Assembly: GCA_002269645.1 (NCBI GenBank)
Contig: NIVC01004081.1
Coordinates: 1 to 61,435, forward strand
Length of the DNA stretch: 61,435 nt
Source: Macrostomum lignano
Taxonomy: Eukaryota
Direction of reading: 5' to 3'
The notes beneath the pieces are model-generated. The model did not search any database. It was not told the origin of the DNA and saw only the letters and a list, made by a program, of their open reading frames with translations. A program made the position numbers and the translations under genes. Positions 90-60,697 of this stretch are shown piece by piece; position 1 is the first letter of the stretch, and every line of letters begins with the position of its first letter.

Positions 90-187
90 TAGTGCATCTC
101 CGCTAGTATTTCTTGCTCAGCAAACAGTCAATGGGAAGTGATTTATTCACCTGGCCATCCAGCGGAGCGAGCTTGTTCACGAAGTAC

Positions 188-256
188 CTGCCAGCTCGAA
201 GGCTGAACGCGGCGAACAGGTTCACGTGAATGGCATTTCGCTGGCAATGCAGCCGT
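188..256 (-). CDS. Class B1 GPCR exon: ICL1/TM2 (RRLHCQRNAIHVNLFAAFSLRAG)
   Basis: Matches secretin-family motif RRLHCxRNxIHxxLFxSFxLRA; acceptor ttgcag|A (phase 2) fits the preceding exon; donor AG|GTAC. Confidence 0.9.
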
Positions 257-437: not shown

Positions 438-532
438 CTGAAAGCGGCCAAAATGCAGATGGCCGTCAGCAGCGAAGCCAACGACAGGCCGAAGCCGGCG
501 AACCCGATGCCGTCCAGAATGGTGATGTGCAT
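438..532 (-). CDS. Class B1 GPCR exon: TM1 (MHITILDGIGFAGFGLSLASLLTAICILAAFR)
   Basis: Class B TM1 signature (GxxLSLxSLxxAxxILxxFR); acceptor ccgcag|ATG phase 0; donor AG|GTGCG phase 2. Confidence 0.88.
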
Positions 533-574
533 CTGCGGCGTTTCATGGAGCATTAAACTGTTTTACAGAGTGAC

Positions 575-735
575 ACTGTTTACATGTGTCACTGTGTCTA
601 TGTGTCAATCACATCTGCTCTATGTGTCACTCACATCTGCCCTATGTGTCATTCACATCTGCTCTATGTGTCACTCACATCTGCTCTATGTGTCACTCAC
701 ATCTGCTCTATGTGTCACTCGCACCTGCATCATGT
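575..735. repeat. About 22-bp minisatellite (TCACATCTGCTCTATGTGTCAC)n in GPCR intron
   Basis: Several imperfect units visible. Confidence 0.85.
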
Positions 736-791
736 GACTAACAGAGCACCTCTTCAGCCTCATCTGCTCTCAGCGCTCCGCCGCAGCTCAC

Positions 792-1210
792 CTTAATCCA
801 CTCAGAGCCGGCCGGCATCTTCACCGGTGCCGGCTCGATGAGGCATTCGCTAAAGTTGGTCCAGCCGCCGCCGCCGGCACCGCCGCTGTCGTCAACGTCA
901 TCGCCGTCAAACTCGGTTGGCCTTCGCTGCCAGACGCCTCGGTCGGTGCACAGCCGGCTGGCGCGCCGGTGGCGTAGGACGTCGTTCAAATAGTCGGGGC
1001 AAGGCGCCGAGACCCTGGCGCCGGCCTCCGCGCTCGGCCAGCAGACGGCCACATCGAACTCGGGCGGGCAGCGCGGCCAGGAGGCCGAGACGGATTCGTT
1101 CTGCTCGGATCGGCCTCCAATCGAGAACTCGGCCACTCGACGACGGCAGATCAGCCTCTCCAGCAGCAATCGCTGGCGCTGCGTGCTGTTGGAGATGCTG
1201 TCCGGCGCAT
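792..1210 (-). CDS. Class B1 GPCR hormone-binding extracellular domain exon, proximal copy (ECD-B), intact
   Basis: DAPDSISNSTQRQRLLLERLIC...RCPPEFDVAVCWP...SAPCPDYLND...ASRLCTDRGVW...GWTNFSEC...EWIK; six conserved Cys plus Asp/Trp/Pro; acceptor ctgcag|AT phase 1; donor AAG|GTGAGC phase 0; 419 nt with open frame. Confidence 0.9.
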
Positions 1211-1224
1211 CTGCAGTTGTTGGG

Positions 1225-1475
1225 TTTGGAGTTTAAGAGGGCGGATTTGGAGTTTTAGAGAGCGGATTTGGAGTTTTAGAGAGCGGATTTGGAGTTTTAG
1301 AGGGCGGATTTGGAGTTTAAGAGGCGGATTTGGAGTTTTAGAAGGCGGATTTGGAGTTTTAGAAGGCGGATTTGGAGTTTTAGAAGGCGGATTTGGAGTT
1401 TTAGAAGGCGGATTTGGAGTTTTAGAAAGTGGATTTGGAGTTTTAGATGGCGGATTTGGAAGTTTAACAGGGCGG
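1225..1475. repeat. 21-bp minisatellite (GGCGGATTTGGAGTTTTAGAA)n abutting ECD-B acceptor
   Basis: About 12 units visible. Confidence 0.95.
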
Positions 1476-1961
1476 ATTGTAGAGTAAATTTTGAGAGCGA
1501 ATTGCGAATTTCGAAGCGAATTTGAATTTTTCCTTTTTGTGATGCCATTAGAGTAGCTCTAAGAATTCTGAGAAAGAGAACTTTTAGAAAGCAAAGCAGT
1601 CACAGGTCTTCCACTAAATCAACCGCTTTGTATAACTGCAAAGGTACTACGCTCGTAATTAGTAGTTGCCAGGTATACTCGTAGGAGAATTGTGACGATC
1701 TGTCATTTTATTACTAGCATTTATTAGATTCCTTTCAAAGTTCCGAATGCTGACATGCATTCAGTGAACTATTTCCTTCGACTATGTCAATGCTACTGCC
1801 ATTCTAGTATTGAGACATTTAATCTGTGCCCAGGTTATTAATCTGGGTGTGGGTTTTGTCAGGCGAGCACAAGGTGAGCAGGTGGGCAGGGCACACGTGA
1901 TCCTGGATTGCGTGCTCAGGACAGATCGCGGCTCCTCTGCACATAGTACGAGCTAGAAAAG

Positions 1962-2278
1962 ATGAGGTGGGGCAGGGAGTGAGGGGGGCAGGGAGTGAGG
2001 TGGGGCAGGGAGTGAGGTGGGGCAGGGAGTGAGGTGGGGCAGGGAGTGAAGTGGGGCAGGGAGTGAGGTGGGGCAGGGAGTGAAGTGGGGCAGGGAGTGA
2101 GGTGGGGCAGGGAGTGAGGAGGGGCAGGGAGTGAGGTGGGGCAGGGAGTGAGGTGGGGCAGGGAGTGAAGTGGGGCAGGGAGTGAGGCAGGGAGTGAAGT
2201 GGGCAGGGAGTGAGGTGGGGCAGGGAGTGAGGAGGGGCAGTGAGGTGGGGCAGGGAGTGAGGTGGGGAGGGAGTGAGG
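1962..2278. repeat. 17-18-bp G-rich minisatellite (GGGAGTGAGGTGGGGCA)n
   Basis: Units visible; related to the array at 4592-5270. Confidence 0.95.
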
Positions 2279-2351
2279 AAGAAGAGAGGGCGAATGAAGT
2301 AAGTTAGCGGGTGTAGCAGGGAGTGGGGAGCTCTTTTCAGCAGCTTCTCAC

Positions 2352-2715
2352 CTCCTCAACAATTTGAGCAAAGACTTTCTTATCCTTCGGTTTGCATTCG
2401 GTCAAGTCGGTAACCGCTTCGACGACGGCCGCCTTGCTGTCGCTGCCGTTGACAGTCGCGGGGGGAGGCCCGGGTGGGCATCGGCGCCAGGCCGACGCGG
2501 TGCCGTTGCCGCTGAAGAGGCTGGGCGGGCAGGCCGCTGCCATTTCGGCGCCGCTTCGGAGCGGCGGCCAGCAGAGGAGGCCGTCGAAGCTGCCGGGGCA
2601 GTCGGGAGGTTGTCGGAGCGCCAGTCGTCGAGGCGTCGCTCCAGCAGCGACATCTGGCAGGCGGCTTCGACGTCGCGCAGTTCGTCGACGATTTGAAGGA
2701 CTGCGTCAGCTGCAT
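2352..2715 (-). CDS. Second class B1 GPCR hormone-binding domain exon (ECD-A), with a 1-nt frameshift near 2604-2610 (error or pseudoexon)
   Basis: One frame gives DAADAVLQIVDELRDVEAACQMSLLERR; the adjacent frame gives PDCPGSFDGLLCWPPLRSGAEMAAACPPSLF...WRRCPPG...TDLTECKPKDKKVFAQIVEE; six Cys; acceptor tag|ATGCAGCTGAC resembles cag|ATGCGCCGGAC of ECD-B; donor GAG|GTGAGA phase 0; 364 nt, one short of in-frame. An alternative acceptor exists at 2731. Confidence 0.75.
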
Positions 2716-2834
2716 CTATGTCGGCTGCGGCCTGAATGTGAATAGAGATGGCTGAGTATTCAGAATGGGATCAGATGCAAACGATAACTTTGATAATGAT
2801 GCTGTTGTGTTTTTGTTTAAGATTCAATTATGAC

Positions 2835-3745
2835 GGGTGAGATTTGGTTCGTGTATAGAGTTAGATTCGATTGGCGAGGGTGGGATTCGATTGGGGAGGT
2901 TGAGATTCGATTGGAGAGGGTGAGATTCGATTGGCGAGGGTGGGATTCGATTGGGGAGGTTGAGATTCGATTGGAGAGGGTGAGATTCGATTGGGGAGGT
3001 TGAGATTCGATTGATGAGGGTGAGATTCGATTAGAAAGGGTGAGATTCGATTGATGAGGGTGAGATTCGATTGAAGAGGTTGAGATTCGATTGATGAGGG
3101 TGAGATTCAATTAGAAAGGGTGAGATTCGATTGATGAGGGTGAGATTCGATTGGAGAGGGTGAGATTCGATTGATGAGGGTGAGATTCGATTAGAAAGGG
3201 TGAGATTCGATTGATTAGGGTGAGATTCGATTGATGAGGGTGAGATTCGATTAGAAAGGGTGAGATTCGATTGATGAGGGTGAGATTCGATTAGAAAGGG
3301 TGAGATTCGATTGATGAGGGTGAGATTCGATTAGAAAGGGTGAGATTCGATTGATGAGGGTGAGATTCGATTGATGAGGGTGAGATTCGATTAGAAAGGG
3401 TGAGATTTGATTGATGAGGGTAAGATTCGATTGGTGAAGGTGAAATCCGATTGGTGAAGGTGAGATTCGATTGACGAGAGTGAAATTCGATTGGGGAGGG
3501 TAAGATTTGATTGATGAGGGTGAGATTCGATTTCGGAAAGTGAGATTCGCTCTGGGAGGGTGAGATTCGATTTCGAAAAGTGAGATTCGATTGGGGAGGG
3601 TGAGATTCGATTTCGGAAAGTGAGATTCGCTCTGGGAGGGTAAGATTCAATTGAGGAGGGTAAGATTCAATTGAGGAGGGTAAGATTCAATTGAGGAGGG
3701 TAAGATTCGATTGCAGAGAGTGAGCTTTGATTGGGGAGGAGAAAA
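2835..3745. repeat. 20-bp minisatellite (GGGTGAGATTCGATTGATGA and variants)n
   Basis: About 45 units visible. Confidence 0.95.
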
Positions 3746-4591
3746 TTCAATTGAGCATTGAAGCTTGAAGAAGTCTGTTAGTGAAATCTTGGAAGCGGCA
3801 CAAAGGACGAGAGCAGGAGTTGTTTCAGATCGGCCCAGCCTTTGTTCCTCTTGTTCCTCTCTTCAAAAGACAAATGGATCCTACTTCGTTCTCAAAGCCG
3901 CTTCGAAAATGTTTTTTTTGAGTCAAGGAAAAGCGAGGCGGGGGAAAAGTGGACGGAAATTTCCAAATTTGTCCCGCACGCCTCTGCCCGCCTCTACCCC
4001 GCTTTTCTGTCCGTCTATCGGCGCACCTTTTTCTGGCCTGCTTTGCAATATTTCAGCACGGGCTGTTTGCTTTTTGAGCAGATTGCAGCTTCACATTTTT
4101 GTCGGAAAATGCCCTGCCCAAACTTTGTCTTTTTTTTCCCTTGGCCCAGCCTAATTGCCGAGAGCTTGCAGAAGGCGGGCATCCCCCTGCTGGATAGAGA
4201 AATTGAGGGAGCGGCAAAGCAACACTTTTATATAGGAATTCGCGTGCAGAGATAGACAAGGGGATAAAGGAGAGAGACGGAGGAGGAAGTAATACTAAAA
4301 TATAAAAAATTCTGCCGACCCCTGTCATTGTGTTGTCAAGTAAGCAGGCTGCATGCTCACCAGCATCATGCCTAGTTACCAGAAGTACGTATTGCAATGT
4401 ACATTCGCTCGGGCCACGGTGCCTACTACTACAAAATATTTAGGCGAAAAAGATGGAGAGACGGCTGTTCAATTTTTGGGCGGCGCTGCGGAATCTGGCC
4501 GACTCCTGGTGGAGAAGAAGCTCACGCTGGAAGCGGCAAAGAATATTGCCCTCGCGGCGAAGATCGCAAGGTTGGAAACAGTGCTAGGGCT

Positions 4592-5270
4592 AGGGAGTGA
4601 GGAGGGGCAAGGGAGTGAGGAGGGGCAAGGGAGTGAGGAGGGGCAAGGGAATGGGGAGGGGCAAGAGAGTGAGGAGGGGCAAGGGAATGGGAGAGGGCAA
4701 GAGAGTGAGGAAAGGAGGAAAGGAGGAAAGCAGAAAAAAGGCCTCCTTTCTCCTCCTTTCCTCCTAAAAGGCAAGGGAGTGAGGAGGGGCAAGGGAGTGA
4801 GGAGGGGCAAGGGAGTGAGGAGGGGCAAGGGAGTGAGGAGGGCAAGGGAGTGAGGAGGGGCAAGGGAGTGAGGAGGGGCAAGGGAGTGAGGAGGGGCAAG
4901 GGAGTGAGGAGGGGCAAGGGAGTGAGGAGGGGCAAGGGAGTGAGGAGGGCAAGGGAGTGAGGAGGGGCAAGGGAGTGAGGAGGGCAAGGGAGTGAGGAGG
5001 GGCAAGGAGTGAGGGGGCAAGGGAGTGAGGAGGGGCAAGGGAGTGAGGAGGGCAAGGAGTGAGGAGGGGCAAGGGAGTGAGGAGGGGCAAGGGAGTGAGG
5101 AGGGGCAAGGGAGTGAAGAGGGGCAAGGGAGTGAGGAGGGGCAAGGGAGTGAGGAGGGGCAAGGGAGTGAGGAGGGGCAAGGAGTGAGGAGGGGCAAGGG
5201 AGTGAGGAGGGGCAAGGGAGTGAGGAGGGGCAAGGGAGTGAGGAGGGGCAAGGGAGTGAGGAGGGGCAGG
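4592..5270. repeat. 18-bp G-rich minisatellite (GGGAGTGAGGAGGGGCAA)n
   Basis: Units visible; explains the spurious ORFs at 4353-5339. Confidence 0.95.
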
Positions 5271-5460: not shown

Positions 5461-5840
5461 GTTAGGGCGATAAAACTATGGGCGACAGAGAGGAGAGGTG
5501 GCCAAAACAACGGAAAAAGCCGGTTAGCATTGAGGCAAAGTAGGGTGCTTAATAAATTCCTATAATTTTGGCACTCAAAATTCTAAATCTGAAAGAGCCG
5601 CGTCACTTACACTGACAGCACCGGATACCGCAACCAGATAGATGACGCAGTGGATGGCTGCTCGAAAATTCATGTCGAACAAATTTCCCCAGACTTGGCT
5701 GGAAGTTCTCTTGCCGGCAGTGGGCGGAAGGAGAAAAAGATACGTTAAATACACTTGTTGAAGTGCTCGGGTCCGAGGACCAATAGAAACCGACTCGAAT
5801 TGGGATTGGCCGACTGCCAGAGCTGGGGATGCCAGCTGTT

Positions 5841-9030
<3,190 letters not shown>

Positions 9031-55130: not shown

Positions 55131-55463
55131 AGGGGTCGGCAAAAAATTTACAGAGGGAATAGTCAGAGGGAATAGCGAAGGTAGAAGAAAGGAGAGGCTA
55201 GGGAATAAATGAGAACAGAAGAGAGACAAAAAGGAGAGGAAAGAGAGGAGACGAAAGAAGGGACTTGAGAGAAAGGATAAGAGATTATTAGAGAAGAGAG
55301 CTGAGAAAAGACAAGACTTCAGAAGCCTTGCTATTGTGAACTTCCAAAGGACCCGAGGGCGGGATAGTGAGGTCCAAAGCCTCCTCCACTCCCTTTGAGA
55401 ATCTCCCTCCACTCGTTGAGACTTGCCCTCTATCACTCCAAGAACCGCCCCCGTCCCGTGCAG

Positions 55464-56525
55464 GGCCTGTGGTACCTGCTCGGCGCGCACCGGACACCAC
55501 CGGACGGGCCAGAAGCCGAGCAATTGATTAACTACACGGATTTTCTCAAGGTGCGCCAGGCTGCCGGGCCAAAATGCGCGCCCTTCTTCCGACCGAGAGT
55601 GTTCGCCAAGCTGCTGCAGGACGACCCGTACGGCCGCATTAACATAATGAGCCTGTTTAACTACATAATGAAAAAAGTGTGGCTGCACCAGACTCGAATC
55701 GGCCTATCCCTGTACGACTTCTCTGGCCAGGGTTACCTGAGAGAGACTGACCTTGAGAACTACATTACCGAGTTAATTCCCACCTTGCCGCAGTTAAGCA
55801 AATTGGAAAAATTATTTCACAGTTTCTACGTTTGCACGGCTGTTAGAAAGTTTTTCTTCTTCTTAGACCCGCTGCGAACTGGCCGGATTAAAATCTCGGA
55901 CATTCTGGCCAGTTCTTTTCTTGACGACCTGCTAGAGCTGCGAGACGAGGAACTGTCCGAGGCTGCCCAGAGCAGCAACTGGTTCAGCGCTTTGAATGCC
56001 CTGCGCGTGTACGGGACGTTTCTTAATCTGGACAAGGACGAGAACGGCATGCTGAGCAAGTCTGAGCTGGCCAAGTACGGCACTGGCACCCTCACTGAGG
56101 TGTTTCTCGATCGCCTGTTCCAGGAGTGCCTGACGTACGAGGGCGAGCTGGACTATAAGTCCTATCTGGACTTTGTGCTTGGCATGGAGAACAAGGCCGA
56201 GCCGCAGTCTCTGCAGTATTTCTTCCGCATACTAGACATTGACGGCTCCGGCTCGCTCACTGTCTGGACGCTGAATTTCTTCTTTCGTGGTATTCAACAG
56301 AAATTGCGCGAGCACGGCATGGAGCCGCCGAAATTGAGCGACTTGCAGAATGAAATCTTCGACATGGTCAGGCCGGCTGATCCCTACAAGATCACTCTTG
56401 ACGATCTGGTTCGCTGCGGCCAGGGCGACACTGTTGTTAATATTCTCATCGATTTGAACGGCTTCTGGAGCTACGAGAGTCGAGAAATGATTGTGGCCGA
56501 TGTGCCGGAAGAGGCCGAGCTTTGA
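55464..56525 (+). CDS. PPP2R3C: PP2A regulatory subunit B'' gamma, exon 2 (EF-hand region to stop)
   Basis: KVWLHQTRIGLSLYD, FYVCTAVRKFFFFLDPLRTG, LDDLLELRDEEL and ILIDLNGFWSYE are PPP2R3C motifs; acceptor gtgcag|GGC phase 0. Confidence 0.96.
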   Translation, partial: GLWYLLGAHRTPPDGPEAEQLINYTDFLKVRQAAGPKCAPFFRPRVFAKLLQDDPYGRINIMSLFNYIMKKVWLHQTRIGLSLYDFSGQGYLRETDLENYITELIPTLPQLSKLEKLFHSFYVCTAVRKFFFFLDPLRTGRIKISDILASSFLDDLLELRDEELSEAAQSSNWFSALNALRVYGTFLNLDKDENGMLSKSELAKYGTGTLTEVFLDRLFQECLTYEGELDYKSYLDFVLGMENKAEPQSLQYFFRILDIDGSGSLTVWTLNFFFRGIQQKLREHGMEPPKLSDLQNEIFDMVRPADPYKITLDDLVRCGQGDTVVNILIDLNGFWSYESREMIVADVPEEAEL

Positions 56526-57320: not shown

Positions 57321-60016
57321 TATGACCATTCGACTGTAATATGCCAATTTTAGTCTTATCAGTCTTACACTACTGTAAAATAATTAGTATACAATTTTTT
57401 TGCCGTCCCAACTCCATTGAGTTTTTATTTACCGATCATTCTTACACTGCATGCTGTCTGTATATGTAATATTTTAATTCAAAGGCTGGCCTTTGTGCTA
57501 AACTTAGATCTGCTACTTTTTTAACCTCGCGGTGATCGTTTGGGTCTTTTTATTTTTCTTGCAATCTGCATGTGCTCTTAACTGCAACTTTTATTTAGAC
57601 AATTCGCTTTGTCGCGGCTATTTTACTTTATTAATTCGATTTTGCTTTTAACTATTAAATAAATCGCTGAATGCTTAAACGGAGTATATCTCTGCTGGCA
57701 TCAATTGAGATGGCTGGCTTTGTTTGACTGTGGTAAGTACATTGTTTACTGCGTTGTTTTAAATCTCAATTCAGTTTAGCGTTCAATGAAGTTTATTAAT
57801 TTAAGAATCGCTAATAAACCTCTCAAATTCTAGATATAAAAGCATTCAAAATATTAATGCATTCAACTAAGCTTAGTTTAGATAGTGCAGTACATGTGTA
57901 GTGTATTTTAGTCAGTATGCCCTCATGCATGTATTTTCAAAACCACACCGAGGTCAACTTATTTTGTTATAGCATTGCCCTTTTGTTATAGCACCAACTG
58001 TCCTGCTCTGTAGTTTTGTTCCAGTTCAGTACGTTGAAGATCATTCCATTGACAACCGTGCAATTACGGAACACATACCTGCACATGTACATGAGGGTTG
58101 TTGATTAGGTCTTGCTGAGCTGTATTATAGCGGTTTGAATATGCGCACGTGAGTTCACAGGTTTTATACGTATACTGTTTTAAAAAGCAAATTGAACCAT
58201 TTCCATACATGTAATTGTAAGCATAACATAATTTACTAAAGGATCAAAGCCACTACGTGCGTGTCGCTACATGAACGGTTAAATGCGCGCCCTTATGTTC
58301 CAACAATAATTAACCAAGGACCACTAGAATTAAGTTACCGTTATATCAACGGTAAACTTCTAGCTTCTAAGTCCTTGTAATTAACATACTTGCCCTGATC
58401 GACAACAATCAACAAAAATGCAGTATACATCATCTAAACACTAACGACTGAACCTATTATTATGCTATTAGTATTTACGCTTAGTAACGATTTACAAATT
58501 TGCATGTCTACGATGCCAATAGCCAAACTGCTTAAGTAGTCTAGCTCGTATAATAGATATATTAACTTCCAGACTCAATAAAATTAGTTTTTGAGTCCAC
58601 AAATAGTAAATAATGTTAATTATAAAAGCAGTTTAATTTTTCCGAAATATTTTCTTTGTTTTGTCGCGTAGGAATCTAGGCACGCTTAATCTATATTTCA
58701 GTTTATCAAACCGAAATGAATTTCGAATTCGTGTTAATGCAACAGGAAGGAATTAGTAAAAATTGTCTAGTGACGGACGTAGAGGGCTTGAACTCATATT
58801 GGAATTTCATATATTTGATTTTAAGCATCTAATAACTATCGTTTCACATGTTTTATGATTTTTGTGAGCAACGTAAAACGTATGACTATTAAACTAAGCC
58901 ATGTAGCTTTAGAGTCTAGGTCTAGGATAGGATCCAGCATTTTATGATTTAACTTGATGGATGGAAGGTTGTTGTTTAATATAAAAATTTAACAAAAATA
59001 AATTAGCCTTCAATCATAACGTTATTTATTAGTGAGCATATCCATTGCAGTAATGGCTGGCACTGGAGCAATGAACCCCACTTTTTTCATGAAATAAGGC
59101 CATGCCAGGCATGCCTTATTGTTGTTTACTGTATATTGTATACTATATACTGGAAACTTTAATTTTTATTTTTAGTCTTTTTTATCAAGCCTACTGGCCT
59201 CATCACTTGTTGAAACGTTCCTATATCTGAAATTTAAAATGCACTTCATTTAGTTTGTTATTTATGCATATATGCAAGCAGGATATTGTATGGTTGAGCT
59301 GAAATTATTTTTGAAGAAGTCATAATAAACCACTGAAACTAGCAAAAAATTCTACCTAAATTTAGCACTTTAGAAGAAAAAAATTGGCCTATATATCATT
59401 TACTGCACTAAAATATTTCATGGATAAATTTAGAAGAATTACAGAATTTTGCAGAGTTCCCTAAATCGTAGAGTTGACTTCTTGAGTCCTTTCTATAGTT
59501 TGAAATAAAAATTTTAATGTCAACTATACATTTACACAATAGTTGCTATTTAAATCCTCAAAATCATAATTTTGAACTAAAAAACTTTTTTAAAGAAAGT
59601 TGTCTCTTCAAGGATTTGCATTGCTAAAATCTCAGTAAAAATGAGTCCTTCAGTTGGGCTAAAACTTCTTGGTATTGATAAAAAGTAGGTAGACACGGGA
59701 GATATTATATTTAAAGGATGTTCGGCGACGACTGCTATTTTTGCTATTTTGCTATATGCAATTTTAATGCTTGTATGTTTGCAAAACATTTGCGAATTTT
59801 TTTTCATTAGTTTCTGCACAGTAATGAATTTATAAATCATAATATACCTTGCCGGTACTTATTAATAAACTTTGCCAATACTAACTTCATACACGTTGTA
59901 TACATGGTGTACTTTTATGCATACAATTATAAGCACATGAGGACCCACTGCATCTTCAATAACAAAACTGCGACCTTCGTATCTCCGCAGTCCTGCAGAC
60001 CAACCGCCCAGCCAGA

Positions 60017-60697
60017 ATGCCTGTCGCTGACCTCAACAGCTGGCTGGCAGAGTACCAGCGCCTCATCAACTCTGACAGTCCGCTGGACGCAATCCGCGAG
60101 TTCGCCTCCCGCAGCCGAGCTGACTTGGCCCTGTTCGACGCTCTGGAGCAGCGCCTGGATGCCTGCCAGGACCACCGCCTGGCTGAGCCCGTCTGCTCCC
60201 GCCTGTTTGAGTTCTTCAAGCACCCCGAGCCGCAGCTGCACCGCCTGACAGTGGAGCTGCTGCCCTGCCTCATCGTTGCCTACCTCCGAGCTGTCCACCG
60301 CCGCCAGTGGCTGGCCCTGTCCGGCGACTCCGACGACGAGGCGGCAGCGGCCGACTGGGTGCGCTGGTACGACCTGATGGAGACCCTCGTGCTCGGCCTG
60401 TACAACCTGAGTGTCGCCGAGCCGGCCTCCGCCAGCTCCGCCGACCAGCTGGCGTCGGTGCCCGGCCTCGGCCGGTCTTCGATCTACCATTCGGCCGCGG
60501 CTCGGCCCGGCCAGAGGAACTGGGCTCGCCTGCGCCAGTGGCCGCGCCGTCCGGCCAGCCGGATTCACCACGAGAATCGGCAGGCCGTGCTGGCCAGCTG
60601 ATGGGGGTGTACACAGACCGGCTGCTTGGACTGTCCGAGCGGAGCCTGCGCTCCTGTCTGGCCGCAGTTGGCCAGCTGTGCGACCTGGGCGGCCAAG
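60017..60697 (+). CDS. FAM126: Hyccin/FAM126-like protein (PI4KA complex subunit), first coding exon with an apparent frameshift near 60594; 3' exons unresolved
   Basis: WLAEY, EPVCSRLFEFFKHPEPQLHRLTVELLPCLIVAYL, METLVLGLYNL, PGLGRSSIYH and ENRQAVL match hyccin (WLSEF, EPVCHQLFEFYRS, EALLLGVYNL, PSLSKPSVYH, QNRFEVL); similarity continues in a shifted frame (LMGVYTDRLLGLSERSLRSCL); end at a possible donor AAG|GTCGG is uncertain. Confidence 0.82.

What the first reader, a model, noticed from the sequence alone, without database searches (positions are those of the whole stretch)
438..2715. Class B1 GPCR with two tandem, splice-compatible hormone-binding domain exons (candidate swappable ligand-binding module)
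Seen: two separate minus-strand exons each encode a whole six-cysteine class B ECD. Their starts are homologous (ag|AT GCG CCG GAC vs ag|AT GCA GCT GAC, i.e. DAPD vs DAAD). Both are phase 1 in and phase 0 out, and both end in a stalk (GSEWIK, VFAQIVEE) that joins the phase-0 TM1 exon MHITILDG in frame. Joining A to B through these sites would shift the frame, which is the geometry of mutually exclusive exons. Known: in secretin/PTH/calcitonin/CRF-type receptors the ECD captures the peptide C-terminus and sets much of the ligand specificity. Known N-terminal isoforms (e.g. CRHR2) change only part of the N-terminus. Inference: one 7TM core could be paired with either of two divergent ECDs.
Basis: partly seen in the sequence, partly recalled or inferred. 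Interest (0 to 1): 0.88.

Follow-up and report, generated by a model that had tools for sequence, protein, structure and literature searches.

The report
Flatworm hormone receptor with two ectodomains
A parathyroid-hormone-receptor-like gene of the flatworm Macrostomum lignano really does carry two complete hormone-binding-domain exons in a row, but once two single-base assembly errors are corrected the exons join in frame, so a receptor with two ectodomains in series is more likely than a swappable one.

Summary
The two minus-strand exons exist, and each encodes a six-cysteine class B hormone-receptor (HRM) domain.

- **Assembly errors.** The window contig lacks one C in each ECD exon, at about 2604-2606 and at 1200/1201. 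The other copies of the locus in the same assembly (C1814, C493, C4709) carry the extra base.
- **Corrected exon model.** Signal-peptide exon 5673..5611, ECD-A 2731..2352 (381 nt), ECD-B 1210..792 (420 nt), TM1 532..438. Every boundary up to the TM1 acceptor is phase 0.
- **Consequence.** SP-A-B-7TM reads as one open 612-aa protein with two HRM domains and a complete 7tm_2 core. A-only and B-only are also in frame, so exclusivity is not enforced by frame.
- **Conservation.** The same SP/ECD1/ECD2/7TM layout, all phase 0-0, recurs in three other paralogous genes. ECD1s and ECD2s form separate clades with matching internal branching, so the exon duplication predates the family and both exons have been kept.
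- **Closest named relatives.** PTH1R/PTH2R, at 30-34% identity.
- **Missing evidence.** No transcript evidence could be reached.

Best reading: a double-ectodomain receptor (about 0.55). Alternative use of the two ectodomains remains possible (about 0.3).

The parts
5611..5673 (-). Candidate exon 1: signal peptide MNFRAAIHCVIYLVAVSGAVS with phase-0 donor AGT|gtaagt
   Evidence: It is the only signal-peptide-like ATG mini-exon with a good donor in the 13 kb upstream of ECD-A. It is conserved at 61/63 nt in copy C493. Analogous phase-0 signal-peptide mini-exons lie upstream of ECD1 in paralogs C330 and C754/C894. Its use is inferred, not shown by transcripts.
2352..2731 (-). ECD-A (ECD1-type) exon: a complete but divergent HRM domain. 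It is 380 nt in the window and 381 nt in C1814/C493. Acceptor ttcacattcag|GCC, donor GAG|gtgaga, phase 0/0.
   Evidence: Pfam HRM scores 29 bits. The AlphaFold2 model has pLDDT 80, and its best PDB matches are all class B1 ectodomains, with PTH1R first at E 5.7e-5. All six cysteines plus FDG, CWP and RxC are kept, but DGxW and YxNYSxC are lost.
2604..2606 (-). C-run that is one base short in the window (CCC here, CCCC in C1814 and C493). This creates an apparent frameshift inside ECD-A.
   Evidence: Alignment; difference list.
792..1210 (-). ECD-B (ECD2-type) exon: a canonical HRM domain. It is 419 nt in the window and 420 nt in the three other copies. Acceptor ctgcag|ATG, donor AAG|gtgagc, phase 0/0.
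   Evidence: Pfam HRM scores 56.5-58.5 bits. Between copies it shows Sd 4 / Nd 2.
1200..1201 (-). Site of the second missing C (GGA-CAGC here, GGACCAGC in C1814, C493 and C4709).
438..532 (-). TM1 exon (MHITILDGIGFAGFGLSLASLLTAICILAAF), phase 0 in, phase 2 out.
   Evidence: It is identical in C493.
151..256 (-). TM1/ICL1/TM2 exon (RRLHCQRNAIHVNLFAAFSLRAGRYFVNKLAPLDGQ). The gene then runs off the left end of the contig.
   Evidence: The remaining five 7TM exons were read on C1814. Pfam 7tm_2 scores 176.9 bits over profile positions 7-250 of 250.
1225..2278 (.). Intron between ECD-A and ECD-B (2351..1211). It holds two minisatellites (1225-1478, period 21; 1963-2278, period 17) and about 480 bp of unique sequence. 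It has no second signal-peptide exon and no TM exon.

Best explanation
The locus is a PTH-receptor-like class B1 GPCR gene of Macrostomum lignano (assembly Mlig_3_7).

- **Origin (inferred).** An ancestral gene had its whole ectodomain on one symmetric (phase 0-0) exon between a signal-peptide exon and the TM1 exon. That exon was duplicated in tandem before the gene family expanded.
- **Product (inferred).** Both copies are symmetric, have ordinary AG/GT sites, and sit 1.1 kb apart with no special geometry. The default product is therefore SP-ECD-A-ECD-B-7TM, a 612-aa receptor with two HRM domains in series.
- **Role of ECD-B (inferred).** The membrane-proximal ECD-B is canonical and under purifying selection. 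It most likely does the usual job of capturing the C-terminal part of a peptide hormone and presenting its N-terminus to the 7TM core.
- **Role of ECD-A (inferred).** The distal ECD-A keeps the HRM fold and disulfide scaffold but evolves fast. It is probably an accessory module: a second binding surface, an auto-regulatory cap or a co-factor site.

Shown here: the exon anatomy, phases and open frame, the domain identities, conservation in paralogs, and the assembly errors. Inferred: the splicing pattern and the roles of the two domains.
For: - **Corrected sequence.** Three other copies restore one C in each ECD exon. The window's single-base differences are C/G homopolymer under-calls. Mlig_3_7 is a PacBio/Canu assembly with 180 Mb of redundant blocks (PMC5730564).
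- **Open frame.** SP+A+B+7TM exons total 1839 nt and give one ORF of 612 aa, both in C1814 and in C493. Pfam finds two HRM stretches and a full 7tm_2.
- **Single leader.** There is one signal-peptide-like exon, with a phase-0 donor, upstream of A and none between A and B.
- **Paralogs.** The same layout with all boundaries in phase 0 occurs in paralog groups C330, C61/C391 and C754/C875/C894.
- **Phylogeny.** The ECD1 clade has support 99/98 and the ECD2 clade 82/51, with matching internal topology. Both exons have therefore been retained since before the family radiated.
- **Fold.** ECD-A is predicted to fold as a class B1 ectodomain.
- **Junction sequence.** ECD2 exons are conserved from their first codons ((+)-x-T-x-[VI]-S). 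ECD1 tails share a 12-14-residue amphipathic helix, while ECD2 tails are variable stalks of 6-22 residues. This fits one continuous polypeptide with only ECD2 facing TM1.
- **Exon lengths.** They are divisible by three and differ by 24-93 nt within genes, unlike typical mutually exclusive pairs (the comparison with known pairs is from my own knowledge).
Against: - **No transcript evidence.** The only database protein with both domains (UniProt A0A1I8IK20 = P0001, locus C330) appears from its accession series to be an automatic gene model (inference from memory, not checked); it skips a real TM1 exon. It does not prove the A-B junction.
- **Other products also in frame.** A-only, B-only and neither are equally in frame.
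- **No known precedent.** No characterised class B1 receptor with two HRM domains is known to me, and a literature search found none. The prior for this architecture is low.
- **Relaxed constraint on ECD-A.** In this gene it shows Nd 5 / Sd 1 between copies, against Nd 3 / Sd 17 for ECD-B plus the 7TM exons (Fisher p=0.0045). It has lost the DGxW core motif. This would also fit an exon that is often skipped.
Confidence: 0.55

Rival explanations
1. Alternative ectodomains. The two symmetric exons are used alternatively, either mutually exclusive or as independent cassettes. One 7TM core is then paired with ECD-A or ECD-B, giving isoforms with different ligand capture. This is the reader's idea, but with exclusivity enforced by regulation rather than by reading frame.
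For: - Both donors are phase 0 and join the phase-0 TM1 acceptor. Both acceptors accept the phase-0 SP donor.
- The tails after the sixth cysteine are of similar length in A (14 aa) and B (17 aa), so each could serve as a stalk.
- The pair is conserved in four paralogs.
- ECD-A shows low synonymous but high non-synonymous divergence, and the roughly 60 nt upstream of its acceptor are identical between copies. This is weakly reminiscent of regulated exons.
- Tandemly duplicated homologous exons are often mutually exclusive (general knowledge).
Against: - The frame argument is void.
- There is no steric constraint, since the intron is 1.1 kb.
- Both donors are ordinary U2-type GTGAG.
- ECD1 and ECD2 are only 23-34% identical, and their lengths differ.
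- ECD2 heads are conserved from the first codon, unlike a free post-signal-peptide N-terminus.
- No isoform evidence exists in any reachable database.
Confidence: 0.3
2. ECD-A of this particular gene is a decaying relic. The ancestral double arrangement is functional in the paralogs, but here exon A is no longer needed. It is either skipped or carried along as an inert in-frame spacer.
For: - ECD-A has pN/pS of about 1.6, against 0.16 for ECD-B and 0.03 for the 7TM exons.
- Among the four ECD1 exons it alone has lost the DGxW and YxNYSxC motifs.
- It has the longest branch in the tree.
- The AlphaFold2 model has pLDDT below 50 at the degenerate stretch.
- All three forward frames are open over this GC-rich exon, so openness by itself is weak evidence.
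Against: - All six cysteines and the FDG/CWP/CP/RxC residues are retained despite about 25-30% identity to the other ECD1s.
- A confident HRM fold is predicted.
- Splice sites are intact in both independent copies.
- The substitution counts are tiny, and A against B alone is not significant (5:1 against 2:4).
Confidence: 0.12
3. The window copy (contig C4081) is a true pseudogene allele, with real frameshifts in both ECD exons.
For: Taken literally, the window carries a 1-nt deletion in each ECD exon.
Against: From 3100 down to 1, all but one of the single-base differences to the near-identical C1814 are missing C/G bases in homopolymers, in introns as well. There are only two substitutions. 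Three other copies are intact. The assembly is known to be error-prone and redundant.
Confidence: 0.03

Closest known systems
Vertebrate PTH1R / PTH2R (class B1, secretin-family GPCRs)
   Same: They are the best named matches, at 30-34% identity over ECD-B plus the 7TM core. The layout is signal peptide, N-terminal helix, six-cysteine HRM fold, stalk, 7tm_2. The ECD-A model matches PTH1R ectodomain structures best.
   Different: Known PTH receptors have one HRM domain, encoded by several exons. Here the whole domain sits on one symmetric exon and is present twice in tandem.
UniProt A0A1I8IK20 (M. lignano 'G_PROTEIN_RECEP_F2_4 domain-containing protein', P0001)
   Same: It is the paralog at locus C330, about 40% identical. 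The predicted protein contains ECD1 and ECD2 joined at exactly the phase-0 sites homologous to those of the window gene, with two HRM stretches.
   Different: It appears to be an uncurated automatic model, judging from its accession series (my inference from memory). It skips the TM1 exon and reads into a minisatellite. It has not been described or analysed anywhere I could find.
N-terminal splice variants of class B1 receptors (CRHR2 alpha/beta/gamma, PAC1 short forms)
   Same: In these receptors alternative 5' exons change ectodomain sequence and ligand selectivity (from my own knowledge).
   Different: Those variants replace or delete only part of the N-terminus. None swaps or doubles a complete six-cysteine domain.
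FGFR2 IIIb/IIIc-type mutually exclusive exons
   Same: They are tandemly duplicated homologous exons encoding ligand-binding sequence (from my own knowledge).
   Different: FGFR2 exons encode half a domain and have lengths not divisible by three, so double inclusion is destructive. Here each exon is a whole domain with length divisible by three, so double inclusion is benign.
Schistosoma mansoni Smp_170560 (flatworm PTH-receptor-like secretin GPCR)
   Same: It is a flatworm receptor with an HRM domain and PTH-receptor homology (PMC3261222).
   Different: It is reported with an HRM domain (the paper does not give a count). Parasitic and planarian flatworms were reported to have only 1-2 secretin-type receptors, whereas M. 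lignano has at least four double-HRM genes.

Membership tests
Class B1 (secretin-family) GPCR | Seven-transmembrane core matching Pfam 7tm_2 (PF00002) | tested here: met
   The score is 176.9 bits over profile positions 7-250 of 250 for the spliced protein. Only the first two TM exons lie in the window; the rest were read on C1814.
Class B1 (secretin-family) GPCR | N-terminal HRM ectodomain (PF02793) with six conserved cysteines and the D/W/P/R core residues | tested here: met
   ECD-B scores 56.5 bits with all motifs present. ECD-A scores 29 bits (cut-off 26.2), with six cysteines and FDG/CWP/RxC present but DGxW absent. The predicted ECD-A fold matches PTH1R, PAC1R and GHRHR ectodomains.
Class B1 (secretin-family) GPCR | No GAIN/GPS autoproteolysis domain (separates B1 from adhesion B2) | tested here: met
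   Pfam finds only HRM and 7tm_2 in the 612-aa protein. ECD-B is followed directly by TM1.
PTH-receptor subfamily | Orthology to PTH1R/PTH2R rather than to other B1 receptors | tested here: inconclusive
   PTH1R/PTH2R dominate the top hits and the fold matches. No full B1 phylogeny was built, and the ligand is unknown.
Peptide-hormone-activated receptor | Binds a peptide and signals through G proteins | not testable with these tools
   This needs expression and cAMP or binding assays.
Mutually exclusive exon pair | Adjacent homologous exons with the same phases | tested here: met
   Both exons are HRM domains, both are phase 0/0, and they lie 1.1 kb apart.
Mutually exclusive exon pair | Joint inclusion or joint skipping is incompatible (frame shift/NMD, steric or U2/U12 clash) | tested here: not met
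   A+B gives an open 612-aa frame. The intron is 1141 nt, and both donors are GTGAG.
Mutually exclusive exon pair | Transcripts contain exactly one of the two exons | not testable with these tools
   No transcript-derived sequences of this gene family are in the reachable collections.

The most novel reading that the evidence does not exclude
A whole family of flatworm PTH-receptor-like GPCRs (four paralogous genes) uses regulated alternative splicing to place either of two complete, anciently diverged hormone-binding ectodomains on one 7TM core, or to stack both. This would be a modular way of switching ligand specificity that is not known for any class B receptor.
Probability: 0.3. Interest if true: 0.8.

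Novelty: new variant of a known kind. Interest (0 to 1): 0.55.

Why it matters
In class B1 GPCRs a single ectodomain captures the hormone, and no characterised member has two. A conserved family with two complete HRM domains per gene, whether in series or used alternatively, would be a natural experiment on several questions:
- how ectodomain number and identity shape ligand capture;
- how they affect receptor auto-inhibition;
- how they set specificity.

It would also show how symmetric domain-exon duplication creates new receptor architectures. In practice, the finding shows that this assembly's homopolymer errors can create false splice-phase arguments. It also shows that the existing UniProt model of the paralog is wrong at TM1.

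Tried and rejected
Phase 1 in for both exons was rejected. It is arithmetically inconsistent for A (364 nt with an internal stop). For B it depends on a 1-nt deletion.
- **An internal phase-1 acceptor in A** (ctgccag|AT GTC) would give an in-frame exon lacking C1. I considered it, then dropped it once the other copies restored the frame.
- **A second signal-peptide or promoter exon between A and B** (a CRHR2-like alternative 5' module). None was found.
- **ECD-A as a fragment of another gene.** Rejected. There are no TM exons between A and B, the strand is the same, and the layout is conserved in four paralogs.
- **Transcript or isoform evidence.** Three word-indexed searches of the 5.8-billion-protein collection were run: ECD-B+7TM; SP+A+B+TM1-2; ECD-B+TM1-2. 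One exhaustive HMMER search with ECD-A was run against 1.84 billion representatives. Only the paralog model P0001 came back. The second search was probably swamped by low-complexity words.
- **dN/dS between genomic copies.** It is informative for the 7TM exons and suggestive for ECD-A. The counts are too small to separate A from B, or ECD1 from ECD2 in the paralogs.
- **Exon versus intron divergence between copies.** There was no useful contrast: 1.4-1.6% against about 2-3%.
- **Literature.** I found no report of tandem HRM domains or of mutually exclusive ectodomain exons in class B GPCRs.
Full report
**What is in the window.**
On the minus strand, the region 2770-150 holds four coding blocks:
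- an HRM-like block ending ..VFAQIVEE|gtgaga at 2352;
- a second HRM block ending ..GSEWIK|gtgagc at 792;
- a TM1 exon at 532..438;
- a TM1/TM2 exon at 256..151.

The contig ends after that. Pfam assigns both ectodomain blocks to HRM (PF02793). ECD-B scores 56.5 bits and ECD-A 29 bits, against a cut-off of 26.2. The core of the observation, two complete six-cysteine class B ectodomain exons in tandem before one TM1 exon, is therefore real.

**What is wrong with the stated geometry.**
The frame that begins DAAD.. carries the N-terminal helix and the first cysteine, then runs into a stop. Cysteines 2-6 lie in another frame.

The window is the whole of contig C4081 in a 764-Mb, 5269-contig assembly. 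The same locus is present on C1814 (near-identical) and, at about 95-98% identity, on C493 and C4709.

Alignments of these copies show two missing bases in the window:
- One C is missing from a CCCC run inside ECD-A, at window 2604-2606.
- One C is missing at the start of ECD-B, where the window reads GGA-CAGC and all three other copies read GGACCAGC.

From 3100 down to 1, every single-base gap against C1814 but one (eight in all) is a base missing from the window in a C or G run. Several of them lie in introns. Only two differences are substitutions. That is the signature of long-read homopolymer error, not of mutation.

The assembly statistics match Macrostomum lignano Mlig_3_7, a PacBio/Canu assembly. 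The published figures are 5270 scaffolds, 764.4 Mb, 180 Mb of redundant blocks at 95% identity or more, and about 64% error-free bases by REAPR (PMC5730564). The best database hit is also an M. lignano protein.

**Corrected gene model.**
With the two bases restored, the exons are as follows:

| Exon | Window coordinates | Length | Acceptor / donor | Phase in / out |
|---|---|---|---|---|
| Signal peptide (MNFRAAIHCVIYLVAVSGAVS) | 5673..5611 | 63 nt | start ATG / AGT\|gtaagt | - / 0 |
| ECD-A | 2731..2352 | 381 nt | ttcacattcag\|GCC / GAG\|gtgaga | 0 / 0 |
| ECD-B | 1210..792 | 420 nt | ctgcag\|ATG CGC CGG ACC / AAG\|gtgagc | 0 / 0 |
| TM1 | 532..438 | 95 nt | cag\|ATG / CAG\|gtgcga | 0 / 2 |

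- Six further exons complete the 7TM core. One of them (256..151) is in the window, and the other five lie beyond its left end on C1814.
- Concatenating all exons gives 1839 nt and one open frame of 612 aa, both in C1814 and in C493.
- Pfam finds two HRM stretches and a complete 7tm_2 domain, at 176.9 bits, in that protein.
- Joining A to B is therefore in frame. A-only, B-only and neither are in frame too.
- The intron between A and B contains two minisatellites and about 480 bp of unique sequence. It has no second signal-peptide exon and no TM exon.

**The arrangement is a family trait.**
Genome-wide scans with HRM and 7tm_2 found the same order, HRM then HRM then 7TM, at three further gene lineages. 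Each lineage is present in two or three redundant copies:
- C330, C1406 and C587
- C61, C1134 and C391
- C754, C894 and C875

In all of them both ectodomain exons are bounded by AG/GT sites in phase 0. Signal-peptide-like mini-exons with phase-0 donors lie upstream of ECD1 in C330 and in C754/C894.

A maximum-likelihood tree of the eight ectodomains plus outgroup receptors gave these results:
- The four upstream domains form one clade, with support 99/98.
- The four downstream domains form another clade, with support 82/51.
- The window gene pairs with C61 in both clades, with support 88/80 and 96/92.

The exon duplication therefore predates the radiation of the family, and both exons have been kept in every lineage since.

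| Comparison | Identity |
|---|---|
| ECD2 exons among paralogs | 37-44% |
| ECD1 exons among paralogs | 24-38% |
| ECD1 against ECD2 | 23-34% |

Other class B genes in the genome show single HRM hits.

**Is ECD-A a real domain?**
- An alignment of eight ECD1 exons keeps all six cysteines and the FDG, CWP, CP and RxC residues invariant.
- The window gene's ECD-A alone has lost the DGxW and YxNYSxC motifs.
- AlphaFold2 on that alignment gives mean pLDDT 80.3. The model has a long N-terminal helix, beta-hairpins and a short C-terminal helix. Confidence is low only at residues 95-100, the degenerate stretch.
- All significant PDB matches are class B1 ectodomains, with PTH1R first at E 5.7e-5.
- Substitution counts between copies C1814 and C493:

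| Region | Synonymous | Non-synonymous | pN/pS |
|---|---|---|---|
| 7TM exons | 13 | 1 | 0.03 |
| ECD-B | 4 | 2 | 0.16 |
| ECD-A | 1 | 5 | about 1.6 |

- ECD-A differs from the rest of the gene (Fisher p=0.0045), but not significantly from ECD-B alone.
- In the paralogs the counts are too small to rank ECD1 against ECD2.

ECD-A is thus a folded, disulfide-scaffolded but fast-evolving HRM domain.

**Which splicing pattern?**
No direct evidence could be obtained.
- Three searches of the 5.8-billion-protein collection, and an exhaustive HMMER search with ECD-A against 1.84 billion representatives, returned only one relative that carries an ECD1-type domain. It is UniProt A0A1I8IK20 (P0001).
- P0001 maps to locus C330. 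It joins ECD1 to ECD2 at exactly the phase-0 sites.
- It appears, from its accession series (my inference from memory), to be an automatic model. It skips a perfectly good TM1 exon and reads into a minisatellite, so it is not proof of the junction.

Indirect arguments favour constitutive tandem inclusion:
- The splice sites are ordinary, and the intron is long.
- Exon lengths are divisible by three and are unequal within genes.
- There is a single upstream signal-peptide exon.
- ECD2 exons are conserved from their very first codons, in the pattern (+)-x-T-x-[VI]-S.
- ECD1 exons end in a conserved 12-14-residue amphipathic helix, whereas ECD2 tails are variable stalks of 6-22 residues.

This is what one expects if ECD1 is followed by ECD2 in one chain and only ECD2 faces TM1. 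None of it excludes regulated skipping of either exon.

**Verdict.**
The finding is real as anatomy but wrong in its decisive inference.
- Most likely (about 0.55): the gene encodes a PTH-receptor-like class B1 GPCR with two HRM ectodomains in series. It was produced by an ancient tandem duplication of a symmetric whole-domain exon and is conserved in four paralogs.
- Possible (about 0.3): the two ectodomains are used alternatively.
- Less likely (about 0.12): ECD-A is a decaying or inert relic in this particular gene.
- Unlikely (about 0.03): the window copy is a true pseudogene.

Either of the first two readings is an architecture not described for class B1 receptors in the literature I could search. 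The decisive experiment is junction counting in existing M. lignano RNA-seq or long-read cDNA.

Noticed in passing
window 392, 549, 1201, 1325, 1854, 2204, 2607: Relative to the near-identical contig C1814, the window systematically lacks single bases in C/G homopolymers. Two of these fall in coding exons and mimic frameshifts. Any frame-based inference from this contig needs checking against the other copies.
   Followed up: yes
L012 / C4709:36346-36727 (copy of ECD-B): The C4709 copy of ECD-B carries three further small indels (-1, -1, +2) relative to the other three copies. The contig ends before ECD-A. It is probably an even lower-quality redundant contig.
   Followed up: partly
L015 (C330:301000-310999), about 6700-6800: The UniProt model A0A1I8IK20 for the paralog skips a clear TM1 exon (LRVIHSIGHIGYGISLVFLLLAISILACF). 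Instead it uses a cryptic donor inside a minisatellite, so the database protein is mis-modelled.
   Followed up: yes
window 597-736, 1225-1478, 1963-2278, 2863-3739, 4587-5268: All four introns of the receptor gene that lie wholly in the window from the signal-peptide exon to TM1, and the one running off its left end, hold a 10-22-bp minisatellite, each of a different unit. The paralogs' introns do too, and some give spurious open frames of 300-1100 codons adjoining the exons.
   Followed up: partly
window 2352-2731 (residues about 86-110 of ECD-A): ECD-A of this gene alone among the four ECD1 exons has lost the DGxW and YxNYSxC motifs. The AlphaFold2 model is least confident exactly there.
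   Followed up: partly
window 55371-56525 (+): A long open exon with an EF-hand pair and EF-hand_13 domains. It is probably a PP2A B''/PR72-like regulatory subunit gene.
   Followed up: partly
window 59963-60601 (+): An open exon matching the Hyccin family (PF09790, 73 bits).
   Followed up: partly
window 1210-1208 and 532-530: Both the ECD-B exon and the TM1 exon begin with ATG immediately after their acceptors. The paralogs' ECD2 exons do not, so this is probably chance and not an internal start or a trans-splice-dependent start.
   Followed up: partly
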